A DNA stretch of 64,000 nucleotides from positions 186,001 through 250,000 of the IMG/VR virus record IMGVR_UViG_3300031857_000002. The stretch is one strand, 5' to 3'. The translations under genes were made by a program, and so were the position numbers. Below are positions 4,895 to 63,737 of this stretch, piece by piece. The notes below the pieces were generated by a model. It was not told the origin of the DNA. It searched no databases and saw only the letters and a program-made list of their open reading frames with translations. Each line of letters begins with the position of its first letter. Position 1 is the first letter of the stretch.

Positions 4895-6013
4895 TCAAGC
4901 TCTTGTGATAAAATTGTAGAATTCTGGGTGAGTGTGTTGATAACTCTGATTGGTAATAGCATCGTAGTCTTGAATGTACTGTAAGAATGGACCATAAGGA
5001 TCGTCTACCACTGTGATATAACTACTGATATGCGCCAATTCAGGCACACAGGCAATGCGAGTTAACACAGCATCACGCACATCTGCAGTCATTGCAGTGG
5101 CCGAGCAATGTGCCCGTAATCCTGGGAACCAAGTGAACGCATTGTAATTTTTCTTTAACCAAGGAAATGTTCTATTCAGAAAGGCATCTAATTCAGCAAG
5201 ATAAAAAATGTTCAACATGCTGTAGGTAGTTTGTGCAAAGTAGTCAAAGTCTGGGCATTGTTTGCGGAACCAGTGCATGTTGTCCACAACACGAGCCCAG
5301 TCAGCACCATGGCGTTGATATTCAAATCGTTGGTCCATGTCATCAATGCTGAAGTACATGGTCACATGTTCACACTTGTTTAGAATATCCAAAAACTTTT
5401 TGTTTGGTCGTTGGGTGCCATTGGTCACAACAACAACTTCTAAATCATTGTAGTCTCGATACTTGCCCATGTTGGCAAAGAACTCTAGGTAGTTGGATTC
5501 CATAAACGGCTCGCCGCCCTGCATCTGCACAGTTTTTAGTGAGAGAAACAATTCAGGATCATCAATCACAGGTTGATTTCTAGCTTGGTATCTAGTGGCA
5601 GGATCAAAGTAATTCCATTCTGGCGGTGCAATAGCCTGCCACTTTGAACTACTCCACGGACCGCATATGGCACAGGCAAGGTTGCACAAGTTTCCCAGAT
5701 TCAAATCAATCTTGCCATTGCGAGAGCCACGTGGACGAAGGTTAGCAGTTTGCCTTGAACTTTGCAAGCCCATGCTTTCTGTGTGATAGCAAGTGTTGCA
5801 TCCTGCTACAGGACGTCCTGCCTCAGTCTCATCTCTAAGATGCTGTATCCAAGGCGCAGAGTTATGGCCATGATAGATTTGATCAAACCCTGTATTCAAC
5901 ACAGCAGTTTCTGCGCTTTGATAAAGGCAGCATGGTTTATGTGTTAACTGATCGTTGGTTTGGCTGAGATACATGCGGTCCTTAAGTTCCGCACAACGGG
6001 TATCTTGATTCAT
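4895..6013 (-). CDS. Radical SAM protein with additional N-terminal Cys motif
   Basis: CNLACAIC (CxxxCxxC), GGEPF, N-terminal KPCC...CNTC. Confidence 0.85.
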   Translation of the reverse strand: MNQDTRCAELKDRMYLSQTNDQLTHKPCCLYQSAETAVLNTGFDQIYHGHNSAPWIQHLRDETEAGRPVAGCNTCYHTESMGLQSSRQTANLRPRGSRNGKIDLNLGNLCNLACAICGPWSSSKWQAIAPPEWNYFDPATRYQARNQPVIDDPELFLSLKTVQMQGGEPFMESNYLEFFANMGKYRDYNDLEVVVVTNGTQRPNKKFLDILNKCEHVTMYFSIDDMDQRFEYQRHGADWARVVDNMHWFRKQCPDFDYFAQTTYSMLNIFYLAELDAFLNRTFPWLKKNYNAFTWFPGLRAHCSATAMTADVRDAVLTRIACVPELAHISSYITVVDDPYGPFLQYIQDYDAITNQSYQHTHPEFYNFITRA

Positions 6014-8454: not shown

Positions 8455-9117
8455 TTAGTTACGAGCCTGTATAGGCAGGGTCTTTCGAACCAGTTGTGGG
8501 CATGCTAGATTTATAAACAGCGCATCTTTTTCGTTGTCATGATCCACAAAGTAATTTGAAGGGATCCACATTCGTTGGCCGTTTAGTAACATTTTAAATC
8601 CTGGGCTGGGACGAAATTGATCTGCTCGTGTGAAAAAGTATTTCTTTATGAGTTCTCTTTGCGACTCATCTAGATAGCGTTCACGAAAATAGGTTCTAAA
8701 CTTGTGTTGGGGATTGTTTAGCACAACACAATCTGCGGGCAAACACACATCAGCTTGCTTGTGCTCAACTAACTTTGTGCCCGGATGTGCTACAACCGCC
8801 GCAAAATCTTCTGGAGTGTTGGTGTAGAACCACATGGTGTTGTTGCACACCACTTTCTTAAAGGGATTCTTGATGGCCAGCAAGAGATCACATACTTCGT
8901 GCAATCGTTCTTGATCACGATCTGATATAACTGTTCTAGTGCCACTGCTACGCCAATTCTGCAGATAGGTGTTACGCCAATAGATAGTGTTGTCAATACT
9001 TTTGTGGCTTAACTGGCGCATCATATTGCCTTCGGGAATCCACCATATCAAGCAGTGATAATACTGCTTGTAATATGGTTCGCTACGTTGCTCAATGTTT
9101 ACGTCAATATCAAACAT
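8455..9117 (-). CDS. Hypothetical protein
   Basis: Long ORF; start reassigned to MFDIDVN at 9117, which overlaps the clpA stop. Confidence 0.6.
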   Translation of the reverse strand: MFDIDVNIEQRSEPYYKQYYHCLIWWIPEGNMMRQLSHKSIDNTIYWRNTYLQNWRSSGTRTVISDRDQERLHEVCDLLLAIKNPFKKVVCNNTMWFYTNTPEDFAAVVAHPGTKLVEHKQADVCLPADCVVLNNPQHKFRTYFRERYLDESQRELIKKYFFTRADQFRPSPGFKMLLNGQRMWIPSNYFVDHDNEKDALFINLACPQLVRKTLPIQARN

Positions 9118-11371
9118 CTGGGAATCGGATAATACCGTCATCGTCCACCACAGGAATGATCTGTGCCACAGATTCAAAATGTACTGCGTCGTCTTGCATT
9201 GTGACAAACACATCACAGTCACTCAGTCGATCAAACAAGATCTTTTTAGATAGTGGTACCTTGATCAGCTCGTCAATCTTACGTGCCAAGGGTCTAGCAC
9301 CCATCTTGGGATCGTAGCCCTTGTCGGCCAACATGTCTATGACCTCTTCGCTGAGTACAAGTTTGATGTGTTTTTCATCCAAACTGGCCTTGAGCTGATC
9401 TGCAAACTTGATCACAATCTTCTTGATGGCCAATCGGTCCAGCTTGTTGAATCTGCAGATTTGATCAATACGATTACGCAGTTCTGGCTTGAAGAACTCT
9501 TTCATAGCTTTGTCTTCGTTACCAGTTTTTTCCTGACTTCCAAAACCAATAGCATTGCTTTCGTTGTCTCTAGCACCCAAGTTTGAAGTCAGGATAATAA
9601 TGGTGTTCTTAACATCCACACGCTTGCCTGCTGAACTAGTGATGTGCCCTTCGTCCAGCATCTGTAGCAAGATGTTGCTGACATCAGGGTGTGCTTTTTC
9701 AATTTCATCAAACAAGATGATTGAAAAAGGGTTCTTGGTAAGATCACTGATCAGCTTGCCGCCGCCAACGTTGCCATCTTCAAAGCCCACATAGCCTGGG
9801 GGTGCACCAATCAAACTTGATACTGTGTGTTTTTCCTGGTACTCACTCATGTCGTACTTCAACAGTTTCATGTCTAGGTTATCACTCAGCAGTTTGGCCA
9901 GTTCTGTTTTGCCTGTGCCTGTTGGACCCAAGAACAAGAAACTCGCCATAGGGCGAGTTGTTGCACCAATGCCTGCAAAGTTGATGTACACACGTTCCAG
10001 CACAGCATCCACTGCTTGATCCTGTCCGTAGAGCTTTTGCTTGATGTTGCTTTCAAGATCTATAATATTTGCTGAGCGTTCGTTCTGCAGTCGGTCCATT
10101 GGAATGCCTGCTACCTTGCTGACCTGTGCCATGATCATGTCTCGAGTGACAGTTACCAGGCCAGCATCCTTCACACGCTGTCGGGCACAAGCACCATCCA
10201 ACAAGTCAATACTCTTGTCAGGATTCTTCTTGTCATGAATATAACGTCCACTCAGTTCCACAGCCGCGGCCATTGCTTCTGTGTCGATCATCACATTGTG
10301 AAACTTCTCCAGTCGCGGACTCAGGCCAATAAGGATCTGTTCTGTGGTTGACGCATTGGGCTCGTCAATGCTCAAGCGATGGAATCTGCGCATCAACGCA
10401 CGATCTTTTTCAAATGACTCGTAGTATTCTTCCCATGTTGTGCTTGCAATAACTTTGAGGTTGCCCTTGGTGATTGCAGGTTTGAGCATGTTGGCAAAGT
10501 CCAGATTGCTTGACCCCGATGATCCTGCACCCTTCATGGTGTGTGCTTCGTCCACAAACAAGATACAGTTCTTCTTGGCTTCTAGTGCGGCAATAACTTG
10601 CTTGAACTTTTCTTCAAACTCACCGCGATACTTAGATCCTGCCAGTAATGAACCAATCTCCAGTCCCCACACTTCGTGACCTTTCAAGAACTCGGGCACG
10701 TTGTTAGCATGTATTTCTTGTGCAAGTCCGTCAATGATGGCAGTTTTGCCCACGCCTGGATCACCTACCATGAGCACATTGGCCTTGAATCGACGTGCCA
10801 ACACAGTGATCATGTCTTCTAGTTCTGCATTACGACCAATCAAGGGCTCCAGTTGATTCTTTGCGGCCATTGCTGAGATGTTGGTGCAATGCTCTTCCAA
10901 GATGTCTGTGGCCTGTTGTACATTCATTTTCACACTCTCGGGCTGGTGATTGCTTTGATAGAACTCAATAAACTCGGCCTTGCGGATACCATACTTGAGC
11001 AAGAAGTAGTGTGCATGACTGTTGTTTTCGGCCATGATGCTCAAGTACACATCAATCAGGCTCATGCTTCTGCGACCTGTAAACATGACCTGTACATTGG
11101 CACGATTAAATATGCGTTCCAGAGCTTGTGTTTTACGAGGTTGTAAATTTTCTGAAGCACTGATCAAATTGATCTGGCTGTCCAAGTAAGCATTGAGCTC
11201 TGTGTCCAGCAGATCTGCATCTGCACCAAATTTGTCTACCACACGTCTGAACGGCAAGTGGCGTAGCATGCCCAACAACAAGTGTTCTGTGACCACATAT
11301 TCGTGACACTTTTCTCTGGCCAATTTAACGGCTGCTTCGACCACTTGTTCAATTTCGGGATTGTTCTGCAT
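9110..11371 (-). CDS. clpA: ATP-dependent Clp protease ATP-binding subunit, ClpA-type
   Basis: Clp N-domain; Walker A GDPGVGKT and GPTGTGKT; pore loops KYRGEFE and GYVG; IGF loop; no ClpB M-domain. Start MQNNPE follows an AGGA RBS. Confidence 0.93.
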   Translation of the reverse strand: MQNNPEIEQVVEAAVKLAREKCHEYVVTEHLLLGMLRHLPFRRVVDKFGADADLLDTELNAYLDSQINLISASENLQPRKTQALERIFNRANVQVMFTGRRSMSLIDVYLSIMAENNSHAHYFLLKYGIRKAEFIEFYQSNHQPESVKMNVQQATDILEEHCTNISAMAAKNQLEPLIGRNAELEDMITVLARRFKANVLMVGDPGVGKTAIIDGLAQEIHANNVPEFLKGHEVWGLEIGSLLAGSKYRGEFEEKFKQVIAALEAKKNCILFVDEAHTMKGAGSSGSSNLDFANMLKPAITKGNLKVIASTTWEEYYESFEKDRALMRRFHRLSIDEPNASTTEQILIGLSPRLEKFHNVMIDTEAMAAAVELSGRYIHDKKNPDKSIDLLDGACARQRVKDAGLVTVTRDMIMAQVSKVAGIPMDRLQNERSANIIDLESNIKQKLYGQDQAVDAVLERVYINFAGIGATTRPMASFLFLGPTGTGKTELAKLLSDNLDMKLLKYDMSEYQEKHTVSSLIGAPPGYVGFEDGNVGGGKLISDLTKNPFSIILFDEIEKAHPDVSNILLQMLDEGHITSSAGKRVDVKNTIIILTSNLGARDNESNAIGFGSQEKTGNEDKAMKEFFKPELRNRIDQICRFNKLDRLAIKKIVIKFADQLKASLDEKHIKLVLSEEVIDMLADKGYDPKMGARPLARKIDELIKVPLSKKILFDRLSDCDVFVTMQDDAVHFESVAQIIPVVDDDGIIRFPDV

Positions 11372-11401
11372 GGGGTTCCTTTGTAAAACTATTATTGTGT
11401 T

Positions 11402-11430
11402 ATTATACTTGATGTTTTGATCACAAGCAA
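11402..11430 (-). promoter_or_regulatory. sigma70-type promoter upstream of clpA
   Basis: TTGCTT-N17-TATAAT on minus strand. Confidence 0.55.
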
Positions 11431-11444
11431 CCAATACGAAATAT

Positions 11445-58866: not shown

Positions 58867-58895
58867 ATTATAGCAGTTTAGGAATATTCGGTCAA
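58867..58895 (-). promoter_or_regulatory. sigma70 promoter (ATG 6 nt after -10)
   Basis: TTGACC-N17-TATAAT. Confidence 0.75.
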
Positions 58896-60854
58896 CCGGC
58901 ACCAGTTGCCTTGTTTTTCCCAGTTGAGTTTGAATCCGTAATGAAACCCATCCATGGTGGGGTTGCCATTGGGTCCGTTGCCTTTAAGGTCATAGTCAAA
59001 AACTGCATGCCAGTCACCTTGAGCATCAATTTTAAACTGGTGTCTAGCTCGGTATTCTGTGTACTGATCGTTGGGACACTTGTCAGGACCAAACTCGGCC
59101 ATGTCCAAGTCAGGATCAAACCGCAGATCAATTTCAAATGCACCCACGGCCAAGTGCAACACTCTCAACAAAGGCCATATCTCGTTGATCAAACTGTCAG
59201 CTACAGGATTGATAGATGTTTTGATAATATCATAATCAAAATTGTCATCGTAAGGGATCATGTCTTGAATGCTGTCAGGCTGGTAGGTCAGTGTGTAGTG
59301 ATTTTCTACCCCAGCTCTTTCTTGGGCATAGTAAATATGCTCAGACACACTACCATTGTATCCAGGCATATGTCGGCGAAGATGATTCAGCAGGATGTTT
59401 ACTGTTTTGTATCTTACCAGGCGATGTATGATTGTGTTGGTGTAGTCTTCTGTGACCCAGTGTGCGGCATAGTGCCCATGACTCATACCAAACTTTTCAC
59501 GCTCGTTGTGCAAGGGCGTATCAAGGTTTACGTTGCATACTGTAAAACTCCAGCCGTTGAGACTGGTTTTTCTTGTGCGCCACAGCAGAGTCATTGTGTG
59601 TGCCATGTCTACTGGCTGTTCACCAGGAAACCCCACAAACCAGTTGGAATGTGCCTGTATGCCCACCTTGGTCATGTCAAACAAGTTTTGCTCTATGTGT
59701 TCAATTTTGACATTTTTCTTCATGAGATCCAGCACTTTTTGTGAACCAGATTCAATGCCCAAATTTAACACATTGCACCCACCATCTTTGAGGTCTTGTA
59801 AATATTCAATGTCCATGCGTCCGTCACATCGGGCATAGCCTAGCCAGGCTATTTTGATATCACGCTCTACTAGACCCCGGGAAAATGCACGTAGTTCTTT
59901 GAGATTGCCATTGACCAAGCTGTCAATAAACCACACCGCTTCTATGCCATAGGTACGATACTGATATTCAATCTCGTCCACAATGTTGCCTGCAAGACGT
60001 CCACGATAACGCCAGAATGTGGTTTCACTGCAGAACTGGCACTTGGCCACACACCCGCGACTGATCTCAGAACTAACGCCTGTGCCCATGCTGTACAGGC
60101 TCAAGTCAAAGTCCGAATAGTCAGGCCAGGGCATACTGTCAAGATCTACTCGCACAGCCTTGTCATGGTACAACACACGTTCAGGAATCTCAATACCTGC
60201 TTCGTGCTTTTCCAGAATGTCTAAGAAGATCAACTCACCTTCACCTACCACAAGATGATTGTATAGTTCGGGCTCTTTGACTTTTTCCTGGATGGCTTGC
60301 GGGCCACCGCCAATGATTTTTACCGCGGGCAGGAGTTGTTTAATTTCACGTATGATCCAGTTGGTGCAGTCATTGTTGGTGTAGTATAGAGTAAAGCCTA
60401 TGATATCTGGGGCAAATGCCACAATCTTGTCCACCCATTCGCGTAGGCAAGGCTCAATGATGTGATGCACCTGCTCGTGATAACACATGCTCCACTTCCA
60501 ATCAAGATATCCATCCCACAAGGTTTTGTCTGTGGCTTGGTAGGCAGCAATGTTGATATCGAACGCTCGAGTAGCAAATCCACTGCCTTTGGCAAGAGCT
60601 GTTAATCTAGCCACATTATACGGAGCAATGTATGCACCCCACTCAGGTGCAATCACCATGGCCACTCGTGTGCGACGTGTGACTTCAGGTTGATTCAGCA
60701 CCACTGCTGTGACGTTCTTTTGTGAGACAGGCCTGCTCAACTCTTTCATGACTTCAAGCATCACAAGATGCTTGTCGTCGGTTACAGATATTTCTTGTTC
60801 TGCAGGAGCAGGAGTATTGCTACTTTGTATAGCAATAATTTTTGGTATGGTCAT
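58878..60854 (-). CDS. B12-binding-domain radical SAM protein
   Basis: N-terminal cobalamin-binding-like domain (DIIGFTLY, IIGGGPQA); SRGCVAKCQFC; GIESGSQKVLDLMKK. Confidence 0.88.
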   Translation of the reverse strand: MTIPKIIAIQSSNTPAPAEQEISVTDDKHLVMLEVMKELSRPVSQKNVTAVVLNQPEVTRRTRVAMVIAPEWGAYIAPYNVARLTALAKGSGFATRAFDINIAAYQATDKTLWDGYLDWKWSMCYHEQVHHIIEPCLREWVDKIVAFAPDIIGFTLYYTNNDCTNWIIREIKQLLPAVKIIGGGPQAIQEKVKEPELYNHLVVGEGELIFLDILEKHEAGIEIPERVLYHDKAVRVDLDSMPWPDYSDFDLSLYSMGTGVSSEISRGCVAKCQFCSETTFWRYRGRLAGNIVDEIEYQYRTYGIEAVWFIDSLVNGNLKELRAFSRGLVERDIKIAWLGYARCDGRMDIEYLQDLKDGGCNVLNLGIESGSQKVLDLMKKNVKIEHIEQNLFDMTKVGIQAHSNWFVGFPGEQPVDMAHTMTLLWRTRKTSLNGWSFTVCNVNLDTPLHNEREKFGMSHGHYAAHWVTEDYTNTIIHRLVRYKTVNILLNHLRRHMPGYNGSVSEHIYYAQERAGVENHYTLTYQPDSIQDMIPYDDNFDYDIIKTSINPVADSLINEIWPLLRVLHLAVGAFEIDLRFDPDLDMAEFGPDKCPNDQYTEYRARHQFKIDAQGDWHAVFDYDLKGNGPNGNPTMDGFHYGFKLNWEKQGNWCRLTEYS

Positions 60855-60862
60855 ACCAATAC

Positions 60863-61087
60863 TTATTCACGGAACTTTTTATTCCCGAATTCTTTGTTCA
60901 CATAGTACTGAATCAGTCTGCGCTGGATCATGGTCACCAAGTCACCATTGTCATCTTCTATGAGAAATCTCACAGGGCAGTTGCCCCATTTGGCACTGGC
61001 GTTGAATTCAGCAAACCAAGTGCGGTGGTCCTTGTTGGCAGGATCAAACACCACGAAGGGGCGACTGTGTAATGCTAAACGGCTCAT
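60863..61087 (-). CDS. Small hypothetical protein
   Basis: 74-aa ORF, ATGA-coupled to upstream gene. Confidence 0.6.
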   Translation of the reverse strand: MSRLALHSRPFVVFDPANKDHRTWFAEFNASAKWGNCPVRFLIEDDNGDLVTMIQRRLIQYYVNKEFGNKKFRE

Positions 61088-61659
61088 TTATTAACTCCAA
61101 AAAATTCATAATGTTTACCCAAGGTCCACGTGTGTGGATCTGCGATTGCTTGCCCATTAAACGTTTCATACTGGGCACTAAACACTCCGGTGTAGCGATC
61201 AAAAAAGTTCCAATAACTCGGAGTCTTGTTATTGAACCCACTCTTGCTCAATTGAGCATCGTGTTCTTTGCTGATCAAACAGGTTGGGGGATTCATGGCC
61301 TGTTTGATACTGATGCGGTCTTGTATTAGTAAATCTCGTATGCGACTCTGCGGAATCATGTGCTCAAATATACAATTGGCAAGATCCACGCCAACTTCGC
61401 GATAGTGAGATCCTATGCTGCCTTCAATGGTATAACCATGTCCTCTACGTAGATACAAGTCAATGCCGTCACGAATTAGTCGAGCACGTTGATCCAGCAC
61501 AGTTAAATTCTTGTACATTTCTACCAGTCTCGACACTTCGCCACGAACAAACTCTTCGGTAATGCGATAAGCATCCTGGTTGCGTTCCACCATGACCTGT
61601 CGATAATTGATTTCTTCAAAGCCTTCGACTGACTCTTTAAGTTGGTCAATCTTGTTCAT
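61084..61659 (-). CDS. Hypothetical with HNH/DUF1524-like EHxxP motif
   Basis: CIFEHMIP followed by PTCLISKEHDAQL; ATGA-coupled to the ParB-like gene. Confidence 0.45.
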   Translation of the reverse strand: MNKIDQLKESVEGFEEINYRQVMVERNQDAYRITEEFVRGEVSRLVEMYKNLTVLDQRARLIRDGIDLYLRRGHGYTIEGSIGSHYREVGVDLANCIFEHMIPQSRIRDLLIQDRISIKQAMNPPTCLISKEHDAQLSKSGFNNKTPSYWNFFDRYTGVFSAQYETFNGQAIADPHTWTLGKHYEFFGVNK

Positions 61660-62762
61660 GGTGCGACCTTAGGTGCCTTGTATAACTTAGAATGGTTGGG
61701 AATTAGTGTACCATCAACCCACAGCCCTTTGTCAAGCTCAAAGTCAGCACCGTCGCTGGGAATAGACAGTGCGCCGCCGTTGAGTTTGTACACTTCTCGC
61801 ATGAACTTGAACATACCTTCGGGCACGTTCCAGGTGTTGCTACGACTGATCCATTTGGCATGCCGACTTGCTGATGTTTCCACGTGCTCACTGTTGGCAA
61901 AACTCTGTGACACACCCTTACAAACCTGTAGCATCCAGTCCCGGGGCATTTTCTTGCCCAAGCTGTTGACCACAGTATTCATGTGATACAGGCCAATGTA
62001 AATGCCGTTTTGAATTTTAGATTGCTTGGGCCAAGTTTTGATAATGGCTTCAAGAATCTGTCCGGCTACTTTACCAGTTTTATCTGCGCCCATGGGCTTG
62101 TAAGCATAGTCAAAGTGACTCATGTAAAAGTCTTGACGCTCGGCAGTAGGAATCATTTCTGGTTTTTCTACCAGGTCAATCTTGAGACGATTAAACTGTT
62201 CTTGTAGGTTGTAGGCCGGAATAGTTTCCTCGTCCTGTACACCCAAGGTGTACAAACGAATGTTGTTGCGGTGGAAATCTGGCTTGCCAATTTTCTTGAC
62301 CACACTGTTGCTGGTGCGGAATGCGTAGCTGGGAAATTTAGGATCATCGTCCACAACCACAGTGACATAGATCTCGTCAAAGCCCAGGATGGCCAGGGTC
62401 ACACAACGATGTTGGGCATCGTACACAAACAGTCGTTTGAACTTGTAAATGTGTTTGACAGTATCTACCAGTTCTACCAAATCTGGGTAGGTGTTACAAG
62501 CCGCTGGCTGGCAGATGCGATTGTCCCACTTGGCCAGTAGTGCCAAAATTGTTTTGATAATGACGTCTCGTTGTACTTCGTAGTCAATCCAGATAATTGA
62601 TACGGGTACCCGGATTCCGCCTAATGGGAATCCATATCCTGAGTTAAAAACACGGCTTCGCAGTTGTGCGAGTTGTTGGTCAGTGACGCCATGTTCGTTC
62701 TTGAGCTTGTCAAGAATTTCTACAGCAACATCTGACAGAGAGCGCGAAATTCGCTTTATCAT
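61656..62762 (-). CDS. ParB/Srx-superfamily (DGQHR/DUF262-like) protein
   Basis: IDYEVQRD and VYDAQHRCVTL motifs. Confidence 0.55.
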   Translation of the reverse strand: MIKRISRSLSDVAVEILDKLKNEHGVTDQQLAQLRSRVFNSGYGFPLGGIRVPVSIIWIDYEVQRDVIIKTILALLAKWDNRICQPAACNTYPDLVELVDTVKHIYKFKRLFVYDAQHRCVTLAILGFDEIYVTVVVDDDPKFPSYAFRTSNSVVKKIGKPDFHRNNIRLYTLGVQDEETIPAYNLQEQFNRLKIDLVEKPEMIPTAERQDFYMSHFDYAYKPMGADKTGKVAGQILEAIIKTWPKQSKIQNGIYIGLYHMNTVVNSLGKKMPRDWMLQVCKGVSQSFANSEHVETSASRHAKWISRSNTWNVPEGMFKFMREVYKLNGGALSIPSDGADFELDKGLWVDGTLIPNHSKLYKAPKVAP

Positions 62763-62812
62763 ATGTGAGTTCCAAGTTGGTTAATAATGTGTAGCGTTAG
62801 GCTACATGATGA

Positions 62813-62841
62813 ATTATACTTGAACTAGGAATTGTTGTCAA
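62813..62841 (-). promoter_or_regulatory. Consensus sigma70 promoter for the ParB-like operon
   Basis: TTGACA-N17-TATAAT; the -35 overlaps the MTase stop codon. Confidence 0.8.
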
Positions 62842-63737
62842 GCAGTTTCGTACTCAAATAATCTCTCAGCAGGAGGTGCGTTATCATAGTGATCCTCAAT
62901 GCGACGACGACTGATATCAACATAGTGCTGGCTCATGTCAATTCCAACAAAGTTACAGCCTTCTTTTAAAGAACCAATGCCAGTGGATCCAGATCCCATA
63001 AACGGATCTAGTACTAGGCCGCCTTTTGGGGCATATACCCTGGCCAAGTATCTCATGAGGTCAATGGGTTTGGGAGTGGGATGGTCATTGTATTCGCCTC
63101 GTTCCTTGCGTGTGGCACGTGGCGCATAAAAGTATTTTTGGTGGTCAGGTTCATCAAAGTGGCCAATAATATTACTAGGGTATCTGCCGTTGGGGTTGGC
63201 ATCTTCAGTTTCTTTCACAGCCTGTTCAGATGCCTTGGCTACGTCACCACCAAATGCTCTACGTTTGCTACCGCCCTTGACCCAACCTGTAGGAGGCTTG
63301 CCGTCCCACGGCACCCGTGTTGTAGTTGTATTAATTTGACCACATCCCCATTTCTCAAAGTTGGCTTTGATAGATCCTTCTAGTGGCTTTTGTGCTACAA
63401 AGATAGGTTCGTGTGCGGGTTTGAGTCGATTGGCTTTGGCCATCTTGGTAGTGACCATCCATACCACCATGTCAAGTGGTCGGAAGCCTGCATCCTCAAC
63501 GTTCACTGCCATACGGTGATAGAATTCTGGAGCACAGAATGACAACACAAACGCACCCGGCTTGAGCACTCGGTAAACTTCCTGCCAAGTTTCAACTGGT
63601 GGCACGTCATGATCCCAACCTACACCAGCAATTTCCATTCCGTAAGGTGGATCCGTGATGCAGGCGTCAATAGAATTTTCTGCCATGGTTTGCATGGCTG
63701 TGATGTTGTTGGAGCAGATTAAGTTGTATGTGTTCAT
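62838..63737 (-). CDS. DNA amino-methyltransferase (N6A/N4C), beta class
   Basis: ITDPPY (motif IV) before HPTPKP and DPFMGSGST (motif I). Confidence 0.92.
   Translation of the reverse strand: MNTYNLICSNNITAMQTMAENSIDACITDPPYGMEIAGVGWDHDVPPVETWQEVYRVLKPGAFVLSFCAPEFYHRMAVNVEDAGFRPLDMVVWMVTTKMAKANRLKPAHEPIFVAQKPLEGSIKANFEKWGCGQINTTTTRVPWDGKPPTGWVKGGSKRRAFGGDVAKASEQAVKETEDANPNGRYPSNIIGHFDEPDHQKYFYAPRATRKERGEYNDHPTPKPIDLMRYLARVYAPKGGLVLDPFMGSGSTGIGSLKEGCNFVGIDMSQHYVDISRRRIEDHYDNAPPAERLFEYETA

What the first reader, a model, noticed from the sequence alone, without database searches (positions are those of the whole stretch)
61084..63737. DNA methyltransferase next to a ParB-like + EHxxP pair: possible split GmrSD/SspE-like module
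Seen: a beta-class MTase, then a perfect sigma70 promoter, then a gene with YEVQR and DAQHR, coupled by ATGA to a gene with FEHMIP, then a small ORF. Knowledge: type IV GmrSD and SspE join a DUF262 ParB-like NTPase ([P/Y]xQR, DGQQR) to a DUF1524 HNH domain (EHxxP). Inference: an early-expressed two-gene modification-sensing nuclease aimed at host DNA or competing phages, with the MTase possibly protecting self. This arrangement in a lytic phage would be notable.
Basis: partly seen in the sequence, partly recalled or inferred. Interest (0 to 1): 0.62.

Follow-up and report, generated by a model that had tools for sequence, protein, structure and literature searches.

The report
Phage ParB-like plus HNH-like gene pair
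A freshwater jumbo phage carries a strictly conserved, promoter-driven pair of genes, a nucleotide-binding ParB-like protein and a small probable nuclease, that resembles a split GmrS/GmrD restriction enzyme but forms its own uncharacterised phage-only family, and the neighbouring DNA methylase is not part of it.

Summary
There is a beta-class N6/N4 DNA methyltransferase. A 12/12 sigma-70 consensus promoter overlaps its stop codon. Three genes of 368, 191 and 74 aa follow, joined by ATGA overlaps.

Gene A (368 aa) folds with high confidence as a ParB/Srx protein. It keeps the three DGQHR-domain signatures: QR, DAQHR and FxxxN. Gene B (191 aa) has an invariant [E/D]HxxP histidine and the beta-alpha-alpha-beta-alpha layout predicted for GmrD. 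An HNH fold for B is suggested, not proven.

Neither protein matches GmrSD_N, GmrSD_C, DndB or any HNH model. Some relatives of A reach Pfam DUF6551.

A and B are adjacent in 84 of 84 informative loci from uncultured phages. They are essentially absent from bacterial genomes and from GenBank phages. A near-consensus sigma-70 promoter precedes A in most loci. The methyltransferase adjoins the pair in only one of those loci, and that contig is identical to the window itself.

My best reading is a phage-specific, early-expressed, nucleotide-gated two-subunit DNA endonuclease that works like split GmrS/GmrD without being a member of that family. Its target is unknown. Modification sensing and self-protection by the methyltransferase are unsupported.

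The parts
62838..63737 (-). Orphan beta-class N6/N4 DNA methyltransferase (299 aa). It is a neighbour, not a conserved part of the module.
   Evidence: PF01555 at E 8.6e-34. phrog_67 at E 4e-62. PADLOC MTase_II at E 2.8e-37. It is the only N6_N4 MTase in the genome. It adjoins A-B only in L007, which is identical to the window. L025 and L026 have a weak MTase-like ORF (E 1e-6) about 1.1 kb downstream of B.
62813..62841 (-). Perfect sigma-70 consensus promoter, TTGACA-N17-TATAAT. It overlaps the MTase stop codon and drives genes A, B and C, and probably the radical SAM gene.
   Evidence: There are 12 perfect sites in the genome, all on the - strand, against 0.26 expected. A site with at most 1 mismatch lies within 150 nt upstream of gene A in 43 of 84 loci. 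The control inside the gene gave 0 of 84.
61656..62762 (-). Gene A, 368 aa. Residues about 48-156 form a ParB/Srx nucleotide-binding fold of the DGQHR type. Residues about 157-270 form a helical domain that overlays the ParB/KorB/Noc DNA-binding domain. A conserved C-terminal helical region follows.
   Evidence: AF2 pLDDT 91.4. M. xanthus ParB, Z 9.1, rmsd 2.2 A over 91 residues. KorB, Z 8.4 over 186 residues. Noc, Srx, SerK and SbnI also match, and unrelated rows are at Z 4.5 or below. ESM Atlas look-alikes are labelled 'ParB/Sulfiredoxin', DUF6551 and ParB_N. DUF6551 is hit by 7 of 26 relatives.
62568..62582 (-). YEVQR, the QR pair of the DGQHR domain (Q64 and R65 invariant).
   Evidence: The motif is defined in PMC4619093.
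62406..62420 (-). DAQHR, the DGQHR / Srx FGGCHR-equivalent phosphate-binding loop (Q117 invariant; D115 and H118 at least 90%).
62307..62321 (-). FRTSN, the FxxxN motif (F148 and N152 invariant). This is the block that hhalign aligns to the GmrSD N-domain.
61084..61659 (-). Gene B, 191 aa. It has an N-terminal helical hairpin followed by a putative His-Me (HNH-like) nuclease core.
   Evidence: AF2 pLDDT 93.0. Secondary structure: beta 96-100, alpha 104-112, alpha 118-121, beta 126-130, alpha 131-139. T5 SciA HNH endonuclease, Z 5.1, rmsd 3.3 A, 94 of 121 residues. hhalign places it on the GmrSD C-domain EHxxPQ block at P 0.009, and 0 of 100 column shuffles reach that score.
61348..61368 (-). 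FEHMIPQ, which fits the (I/L/V)(E/D)H(I/L/V)xPQ GmrD motif. H100 is invariant and is the putative general base.
61258..61260 (-). D134, on the helix after beta 126-130. The position is D, N, E or H in nearly all family members, so it is a candidate metal ligand.
   Evidence: by my reading of the alignment (inference).
60863..61087 (-). Gene C, 74 aa, no known family. It overlaps B by ATGA and is an occasional third gene.
   Evidence: A homologue lies downstream of B in 7 of 86 loci.
58878..60854 (-). B12-binding radical SAM protein, 658 aa. It is next in the same transcription direction and is not conserved with the pair.
   Evidence: PF04055 at E 7e-16 and PF02310 at E 7e-8. PhpK-type and RiPP C-methyltransferase models score below their cut-offs. 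Homologues lie within 5 kb of A-B in only 3 other loci.

Best explanation
Genes A and B form a phage-specific two-gene module. A strong host-type (sigma-70 consensus) promoter transcribes it, which suggests expression early in infection. Protein A is a ParB/Srx-fold protein of the DGQHR type. It most likely binds a nucleoside triphosphate (ATP or CTP) in the pocket built from the QR, DAQHR and FxxxN motifs, and binds DNA through the helical domain that follows. Protein B is a small His-Me-finger (HNH-like) nuclease with H100 as the general base and an acidic or amide residue at position 134 as the metal ligand. Together they most likely act as a nucleotide-gated DNA endonuclease or nickase. 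This is how the split GmrS/GmrD type IV enzyme works, but the pair belongs to its own phage-only family. The neighbouring DNA methyltransferase and the radical SAM gene are incidental neighbours in this phage.

Shown: the genes, motifs, promoter, fold of A, linkage, and distribution.
Inferred: nucleotide binding by A, nuclease activity of B, that the two proteins work together, early timing, and the target.
For: Linkage and distribution
- B lies directly downstream of A on the same strand in 84 of 86 loci. In the other two the contig ends before B could fit. This holds down to 26-29% identity.
- Only A and B recur across loci. Every other gene cluster occurs in at most 35 loci.
- In phages whose protein A is 83-93% identical, the flanking genes map elsewhere in this genome, in L008 and L009 about 90 kb away.

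Gene A
- ParB/Srx fold with clear separation from unrelated structures.
- The QR, DGQHR and FxxxN motifs are invariant or nearly so, as defined in PMC4619093.
- Seven of 26 relatives hit DUF6551. Phage ParB-fold/DUF6551 proteins bound CTP or ATP experimentally (bioRxiv 10.1101/2025.10.10.680097).

Gene B
- Invariant [E/D]H..P.
- Secondary-structure order as predicted for GmrD.
- T5 SciA HNH endonuclease was the second-best of 48,161 chains, at Z 5.1 with 94 aligned residues.

Reciprocal profile comparison against 19 bacterial GmrSD proteins
- B matches the C-domain at the EHxxPQ block, P 0.009. The N-domain control gives P 0.21.
- A matches the N-domain at the FxxxN block, P 0.013. The C-domain control gives P 0.067.
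- No column-shuffled profile out of 100 reaches either score.

Promoter
- A consensus site with at most 1 mismatch lies upstream of A in 43 of 84 loci, against 0 of 84 in the control.
Against: - No Pfam, NCBIfam, PADLOC or PHROG model for GmrSD_N, GmrSD_C, DndB, HNH or any nuclease hits A or B.
- The HNH assignment for B rests on a short motif, a marginal profile score (hhalign probability 2-5%) and one structural match at Z 5.1. At that level unrelated helical proteins also score.
- N123, the candidate structural Asn, is not conserved in the wider family.
- Structurally A is closest to the non-nucleolytic clamps ParB, Noc and KorB. BrxU, the one GmrSD structure that appeared, matched only at Z 3.0, and in the helical region.
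- Very distant B-like proteins occur without an A-like neighbour.
- No RNA data are available.
Confidence: 0.45

Rival explanations
1. The pair is a modification-dependent (type IV, GmrSD/SspE-like) nuclease that senses modified DNA of the host or of rival phages, and the adjacent methyltransferase protects the phage's own DNA.
For: - The domain pairing and motifs resemble GmrS/GmrD.
- The original GmrS and GmrD are two separate proteins (PMC4619093).
- The conserved strong promoter fits an early attack function.
Against: - The MTase adjoins the pair only in the locus identical to the window, and in none of the other 83 loci that carry both genes.
- No GmrSD_N or GmrSD_C HMM hit, even at E 10.
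- The loop is DGQHR, not the near-universal DGQQR of GmrS.
- The family is almost absent from bacterial genomes, where type IV enzymes live: 5 MAG contigs in about 185,000 species.
- Nothing tested here bears on modification sensing.
Confidence: 0.12
2. A is a nucleotide-switch DNA-binding protein in the manner of ParB, Noc, KorB or DndB, working as a clamp, repressor or organiser of host or phage DNA. B is its non-nucleolytic partner or adaptor, as KorA is for KorB.
For: - The best structural matches of A are CTP-dependent clamps, and they cover both the N-domain and the following helical domain. KorB aligns over 186 residues and Noc over 186 residues.
- Per the preprint, DndB has been described as an ATP-dependent repressor, and a DndB-like protein bound ATP and GTP.
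- The nuclease assignment of B is weak.
Against: - A lacks the GERRxRA box of clamp-type ParB proteins and has DGQHR instead.
- The invariant His in an [E/D]HxxP context, with an acidic or amide residue on the next helix, is hard to explain for a pure adaptor.
- The profile match of B falls exactly on the GmrD catalytic block.
Confidence: 0.2
3. A is a small-molecule or DNA-base kinase or transferase like the ParB/Srx enzymes SerK, SbnI and sulfiredoxin. The pair then belongs to a DNA-modification or metabolic pathway, possibly together with the downstream B12-radical SAM enzyme.
For: - SerK (Z 6.3), SbnI (Z 5.5, 20-22% identity) and Srx (Z 6-7) are among the structural matches.
- A has many invariant polar residues outside the nucleotide pocket: H164, S215, H216, Y219, R322 and E323.
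- A radical SAM gene follows in this phage.
Against: - The radical SAM gene lies near the pair in only 4 of 86 loci.
- No TGT/DpdA gene is present in the genome.
- ParB, Noc and KorB score higher and over longer stretches than the kinases.
Confidence: 0.08
4. The pair is itself a selfish, mobile nuclease cassette (homing-type) that moves between related phages.
For: Flanking genes differ between phages whose protein A is 83-93% identical, while A-B stays intact.
Against: - Both proteins are conserved over deep divergence, with invariant residues in each, and the promoter is conserved too.
- Separate small HNH-like and GIY-YIG-like ORFs are inserted between A and B in many loci. Those ORFs, not A-B, look like the mobile elements.
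Confidence: 0.07

Closest known systems
GmrS/GmrD (GmrSD) type IV restriction enzymes, Pfam PF03235 and PF07510, including BrxU and SspE-type DUF262-DUF1524 proteins
   Same: - A ParB/Srx protein with QR, a DGQxR loop and FxxxN is paired with a protein carrying (E/D)HxxPQ and a beta-alpha-alpha-beta-alpha core.
- The gene order is the same, with the ParB-like gene first.
- A two-protein form exists in the original GmrS/GmrD.
- Weak but reciprocal and specific profile matches fall on the signature blocks.
   Different: - No HMM membership.
- DGQHR instead of DGQQR.
- DGQHR and FxxxN lie about 30 residues apart. In GmrSD proteins a long insert separates them.
- The NLxLLxxxN motif is not kept.
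- The family is found in phages, not in bacterial defence islands.
- By structure A is nearer ParB, Noc and KorB than BrxU.
Pfam DUF6551 (PF20188) phage ParB-fold proteins
   Same: - Seven of 26 relatives of A hit this model, best E 4.7e-6.
- ESM Atlas structural neighbours carry it.
- Phage members bind CTP or ATP.
   Different: - The window's own protein does not hit the model at E 1.
- The best relative scores just under the gathering cut-off, 25.8 against 26.8 bits.
- No partner gene is described for DUF6551 in the paper read.
DndB / DGQHR-domain proteins (PF14072, TIGR03187)
   Same: All three defining motifs (QR, DGQHR, FxxxN) are present. The spacing is compact, unlike the long insert seen in GmrSD proteins.
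   Different: No HMM hit in Pfam or NCBIfam. No dnd, dpd or TGT genes are present.
ParB, Noc and KorB CTP-dependent DNA clamps
   Same: These are the best structural matches, over the N-domain and the following helical domain (Z 8.4-9.3).
   Different: The GERRxRA box is replaced by DAQHR. There is no canonical ParB family hit, and the partner is an HNH-like protein.
Phage T5 SciA HNH endonuclease (PDB 9qgx)
   Same: It is the only nuclease among the top structural matches of B: Z 5.1, rmsd 3.3 A, 94 of 121 residues aligned to B residues 61-163.
   Different: The Z is marginal, identity is 8%, and there is no sequence-level relation. I could not verify whether the catalytic histidines superpose.

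Membership tests
GmrSD N-domain (PF03235, DUF262) | Match to the family HMM | tested here: not met
   No hit for gene A at E 1. One of 26 relatives hits at E 0.17. An HMM built from 19 bacterial GmrSD N-domains finds nothing in the genome at E 10.
GmrSD N-domain (PF03235, DUF262) | (I/V)(I/V)DGQQR loop, conserved in nearly 100% of members (PMC4619093) | tested here: not met
   Gene A has VYDAQHR. Relatives have DGQHR or DGQHT. This is the DGQHR variant, not DGQQR.
GmrSD N-domain (PF03235, DUF262) | QR pair and FxxxN motif | tested here: met
   Q64, R65, F148 and N152 are invariant. hhalign aligns the FxxxN block to the GmrSD N-domain at P 0.013, and 0 of 100 shuffles reach the score.
GmrSD N-domain (PF03235, DUF262) | ParB/Srx fold | tested here: met
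   Z 9.1-9.3 to ParB, with rmsd 2.2-2.9 A over 90-97 residues in three of those entries.
GmrSD N-domain (PF03235, DUF262) | NTPase activity coupled to cleavage | not testable with these tools
   This needs biochemistry. Only related DUF6551 proteins are reported to bind CTP or ATP.
GmrSD C-domain (PF07510, DUF1524) | Match to the family HMM | tested here: not met
   No hit at E 1. There is no PF07510 match anywhere in the genome at E 10, while the control genomes do match. None of 49 family members hits it.
GmrSD C-domain (PF07510, DUF1524) | (I/L/V)(E/D)H(I/L/V)xPQ motif | tested here: met
   Gene B has FEHMIPQ, with F and M as conservative replacements. H100 is invariant and P103 nearly invariant in 49 sequences. 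hhalign aligns this block at P 0.009, and 0 of 100 shuffles reach the score.
GmrSD C-domain (PF07510, DUF1524) | L(G/A)NLxLLxxxN motif (structural Asn and metal-binding Asn) | tested here: inconclusive
   AMNPPTCLISKEHD is present in the window's subgroup. N123 is not conserved in the wider family. Position 134 is D, N, E or H in nearly all members, at a spacing of 11 rather than 8.
GmrSD C-domain (PF07510, DUF1524) | His-Me finger (beta-beta-alpha-metal) fold | tested here: inconclusive
   The secondary-structure order fits GmrD. T5 SciA HNH matches at Z 5.1. Foldseek finds no significant match and lists only weak Cas9-HNH rows. The second look gives only helical matches.
DGQHR domain / DndB superfamily (PF14072, TIGR03187) | QR, DGQHR and FxxxN motifs | tested here: met
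   All three are present, with invariant or nearly invariant core residues. The definition comes from PMC4619093.
DGQHR domain / DndB superfamily (PF14072, TIGR03187) | Match to the family HMMs | tested here: not met
   No Pfam or NCBIfam hit at E 1.
DUF6551 (PF20188) | Match to the family HMM above the gathering score | tested here: inconclusive
   The window protein has no hit. Seven of 26 relatives hit, best E 4.7e-6. P0117 scores 25.8 bits against a cut-off of 26.8.
Canonical ParB CTPase clamp | GERRxRA (box II) nucleotide motif and a match to ParB family models | tested here: not met
   The equivalent loop is DAQHR. There is no ParB_N hit for the window protein. Two relatives hit phrog_1033, 'ParB-like partition protein', at E 2.6e-5.
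Restriction-modification or self-protection pairing with the MTase | Conserved linkage of the nuclease genes with the methyltransferase | tested here: not met
   The MTase adjoins the pair only in L007, which is identical to the window. Two loci have a weak MTase-like ORF (E 1e-6) about 1.1 kb downstream. The other 81 loci with both genes have none within 5 kb. Close relatives have different flanks.

The most novel reading that the evidence does not exclude
The pair is a new class of phage weapon. A ParB-like nucleotide-switch protein loads onto or spreads along DNA and delivers or licenses an HNH-type nickase. It is made in the first minutes of infection from a consensus host promoter, and it disables the host chromosome or a co-infecting rival. 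This would be the first nuclease-coupled use of the ParB clamp principle by viruses.
Probability: 0.15. Interest if true: 0.8.

Novelty: new variant of a known kind. Interest (0 to 1): 0.5.

Why it matters
The ParB/Srx nucleotide-binding fold is now recognised as a versatile switch well beyond chromosome segregation. Phage versions such as DUF6551 bind CTP or ATP, but their function is unknown.

This work defines a widespread phage-only operon in which such a protein is always paired with a probable His-Me nuclease and is usually preceded by a strong host-type promoter.
- At least 207 IMG/VR loci encode a relative of A.
- Look-alike clusters in the ESM Atlas hold up to about 1,400 members.
- Contigs carrying the pair run from under 5 kb to about 357 kb.

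That gives the orphan DUF6551-like proteins a concrete, testable partner and mechanism. If the pair proves to be a nucleotide-gated nuclease, it would be a phage counterpart of the GmrSD, BrxU and SspE defence enzymes. It could explain host-DNA attack or inter-phage exclusion in abundant freshwater and marine phages that have no cultured representative.

The work also corrects the idea that the MTase belongs to the system.

Tried and rejected
Searches that found nothing
- The complex prediction of A with B gave no verdict (score 0.24, mark 0.32). It counts neither for nor against binding.
- Foldseek against PDB and BFVD found nothing significant for B. It listed only weak Cas9-HNH rows and two uncharacterised phage proteins.
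- The second-look VIA alignment of B returned only helical-hairpin matches.
- PDB sequence and profile searches with A1 and A2 found nothing meaningful.
- PADLOC, NCBIfam and PHROGs gave no family for A or B.
- Megablast of the region, and tblastn of A, B and two distant relatives, against 50,697 GenBank phage records gave no match.
- PF07510 and TGT were not found in the genome.
- Literature searches for T5 SciA found no usable paper. The jumbo-phage review does not mention ParB, DndB or GmrSD.
- No RNA run holds the region.

Technical failures
- The first permutation script timed out on hhalign errors. It was rerun correctly.

Ideas rejected
- MTase as a partner: rejected on linkage.
- Radical SAM gene as a partner: it lies near the pair in only 4 of 86 loci.
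- DpdB-like role: no TGT and no HMM hit.

Only genetic code 11 was used.


Full report
**Context.** The window is bases 186001-250000 of a single 320,175-bp virus contig that CheckV rates about 92% complete, so it is a jumbo phage. Near-identical sequence occurs in lake and freshwater metagenomes from several studies. Almost all genes lie on the - strand. They include tail-fibre-like proteins, an ATP-dependent protease and radical SAM enzymes.

- The 299-aa product of 62838-63737 is an N6/N4 DNA methyltransferase. It matches PF01555 at E 8.6e-34, phrog_67 at E 4e-62 and PADLOC MTase_II at E 2.8e-37. DPPY precedes the FxGxG motif, which is the beta-class order.
- Its TGA stop lies inside the -35 hexamer of a 12/12 promoter, TTGACA (62841-62836), N17, TATAAT (62818-62813).
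- Gene A is 61656-62762 (368 aa), gene B is 61084-61659 (191 aa) and gene C is 60863-61087 (74 aa). They are joined by ATGA overlaps.
- A B12-binding radical SAM gene (58878-60854) starts 9 nt after C.

**The promoter is real and belongs to the module.** The genome holds 12 perfect consensus promoters, all on the coding strand, against 0.26 expected. With one mismatch allowed there are 53 on that strand and 4 on the other. Across 84 related loci, a site with at most 1 mismatch lies within 150 nt upstream of gene A in 43 loci (16 of them perfect), and a site with at most 2 mismatches in 75. An equal-sized control stretch inside gene A gave 0 and 3. That this means early transcription by host RNA polymerase is an inference.

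**Gene A.**
- No Pfam, PHROG, PADLOC or NCBIfam model hits it.
- It has 120 unnamed metagenomic homologues.
- An AlphaFold2 model built on 26 of them has mean pLDDT 91.4.
- Foldseek and VIA-align place it in the ParB/Srx superfamily. M. xanthus and C. crescentus ParB give Z 9.1 with rmsd 2.2-2.9 A over 90-97 residues (model residues 47-156). KorB gives Z 8.4 over 186 residues (model 48-270), and Noc gives Z 7.5-9.2. PadC, pNOB8 ParB-N, sulfiredoxins, SerK and SbnI follow. The best unrelated row is at Z 4.5.
- ESM Atlas structural neighbours are viral clusters labelled 'ParB/Sulfiredoxin', DUF6551 or ParB_N.
- Seven of the 26 relatives hit Pfam DUF6551, best E 4.7e-6. Two hit phrog_1033, 'ParB-like partition protein'.
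- The alignment shows Q64, R65, Q117, F148 and N152 invariant, and D115 and H118 in at least 90% of sequences. These are the QR pair, the DGQHR loop and the FxxxN motif that define the DGQHR/DndB domain and recur in GmrS (PMC4619093).
- Further invariant polar residues (H164, S215, H216, Y219, R322, E323) lie in the helical C-terminal half, which has no clear structural match.
- A 2025 preprint reports that phage ParB-fold proteins with DUF6551 bind CTP or ATP (10.1101/2025.10.10.680097).

**Gene B.**
- No library model hits it. None of 49 family members hits a nuclease model, apart from one HNH_4 match at E 0.016.
- The family is compact. A profile search of 1.84 billion representative proteins found 141 at E 0.001 or better.
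- H100 is invariant. R71, Y86, P103, P125, R155, Y156 and H183 are nearly so. Residue 99 is E or D. N123 is conserved only in the window's subgroup. Position 134 is D, N, E or H in nearly all members.
- The model has pLDDT 93.0. It shows a helical hairpin (28-79), then beta 96-100 ending in E99-H100, alpha 104-112, alpha 118-121, beta 126-130 and alpha 131-139. [quoted passage not shown]
- FEHMIPQ fits GmrD's first motif, (I/L/V)(E/D)H(I/L/V)xPQ.
- Fold searches are weak. Foldseek finds nothing significant, with several Cas9 HNH rows at E 3-5. In the unbiased VIA search, the T5 SciA HNH endonuclease is second of 48,161 chains (Z 5.1, rmsd 3.3 A, 94 of 121 residues, model 61-163). It is the only top match that does not rest on the helical hairpin.

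**Direct test against GmrSD.**
- I took 19 full-length DUF262-DUF1524 proteins from 81 genomes sampled from the phylum of one MAG that carries the pair and compared profiles with hhalign.
- The B profile aligned to the GmrSD C-domain exactly at EHxxPQ...NLTLL...N. The score was 22.3 and P 0.009. Against the N-domain, P was 0.21.
- The A profile aligned to the N-domain exactly at FxxxN...G..L...DLxKN. The score was 24.9 and P 0.013. Against the C-domain, P was 0.067.
- None of 100 column-shuffled versions of either profile reached the observed score. The maxima were 16.7 and 21.1.
- The resemblance is therefore specific and reciprocal, but it is confined to short signature blocks, and hhalign probabilities are only 2-5%.
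- HMMs built from these GmrSD domains find nothing in the phage genome. PF07510 finds nothing at E 10.

**Linkage.**
- In 86 loci (80 from IMG/VR and 6 from other assemblies), B follows A on the same strand in 84. In the other two the contig ends before B could fit. This holds for the most distant A relatives, at 26-27% identity. Their partner is 29% identical to B.
- Clustering all neighbouring ORFs shows that only A (85 loci) and B (84 loci) recur. The next clusters reach 35 loci at most. They include a 5'-3' exonuclease, a MoxR-type AAA protein with a DUF2201 protein, a GGACT protein and a cell-wall hydrolase. I read these as the synteny of one lineage.
- The MTase adjoins the pair only in L007, which is identical to the window. 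In loci whose protein A is 83-93% identical, the flanks map to other parts of this genome; in L008 and L009 the upstream genes match a region about 90 kb away.
- In 43 of the 84 loci an extra ORF sits between A and B. Some of these are HNH_3-like or GIY-YIG/T5orf172-like, and the rest are unknown. I read them as free-standing homing-type insertions at a conserved junction.

**Distribution.**
- IMG/VR holds at least 207 loci that encode a relative of A, on contigs from under 5 kb to about 357 kb.
- Among about 185,000 prokaryotic species genomes only 5 loci appear, all on MAG contigs.
- GenBank phages give no tblastn hit.
- Both genes are single-copy here.
- Very distant B-like proteins can stand without an A-like neighbour. 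One appears fused to a primase-associated domain.

**Interpretation.**
- The unit is promoter plus A plus B.
- A is a DGQHR-type ParB/Srx nucleotide-binding, and probably DNA-binding, protein. B is most likely a His-Me nuclease.
- Together they would work like split GmrS/GmrD, as a nucleotide-gated endonuclease. They fail the membership tests for DUF262, DUF1524, DndB and canonical ParB, and they form a phage-only family at the edge of DUF6551.
- Early, strong, host-type transcription favours a host-takeover or competition role, but the target is unknown.
- The ideas of modification sensing and of MTase self-protection are not supported. The second is contradicted by comparative genomics.
- The main rival is a ParB/KorB/DndB-like DNA-binding switch with a non-catalytic partner.
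- The complex prediction gave no verdict and is not used as evidence.

Noticed in passing
whole genome G000; window 12276, 51836, 53242, 55077, 62841 (perfect sites) and 57831, 58240, 58583, 58895: The phage carries 12 perfect sigma-70 consensus promoters, all on the - strand, and 53 against 4 with at most 1 mismatch. They are densely clustered at window 51.8-62.8 kb. Four copies of TTGACC-N17(TG)-TATAAT precede a run of small genes just downstream of the radical SAM gene. This looks like an early-gene region read by host polymerase.
   Followed up: partly
window 58878-60854 (-): A 658-aa B12-binding radical SAM protein sits in the same transcription direction, 9 nt after gene C. Its best NCBIfam hits are PhpK-type P-methyltransferase and RiPP C-methyltransferase models, all far below cut-off. 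Homologues lie within 5 kb of the A-B pair in three other loci (L021, L027, L085).
   Followed up: partly
loci L028-L086, between genes A and B: In 43 of 84 loci an extra ORF of about 130-195 aa is inserted between A and B. It comes from several unrelated families, some weakly HNH_3-like or GIY-YIG/T5orf172-like. The junction appears to be a hotspot for homing-type endonuclease genes.
   Followed up: partly
window 60863-61087 (-): Gene C (74 aa, no family) overlaps B by ATGA. Homologues occur downstream of B in only 7 of 86 loci, so it is an occasional third gene of unknown role.
   Followed up: partly
G000:C1:256920-257168 (-), outside the window: A weak DUF6551 match (E 0.005, 13 bits, one TAA inside) lies about 8 kb from the pair. 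It may be a second, degraded ParB-like gene.
   Followed up: no
protein P0354 (279 aa, metagenomic): A very distant B-like domain (E 7e-4) appears fused to a Pox_D5 / phage DNA primase-like region (Pfam E 9e-4; phrog_864 E 2.7e-6). This hints at a link with replication proteins.
   Followed up: no
window 9110-11434 (-) and 4895-6013 (-): A 774-aa ATP-dependent protease (phrog_4871, E 4e-233) and a second radical SAM protein (372 aa) are encoded in the window.
   Followed up: no
loci L008-L015 compared with G000: Phages whose protein A is 83-93% identical carry the pair among different neighbours; in L008 and L009 the upstream flank matches a region about 90 kb away in this genome. The region is strongly mosaic.
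   Followed up: partly
loci L087-L091: The only 'bacterial genome' hits for gene A are MAG contigs binned as Polynucleobacter, Chitinophagales, Haliscomenobacter and Rickettsiales. They may be mis-binned phage contigs and could hint at hosts.
   Followed up: no
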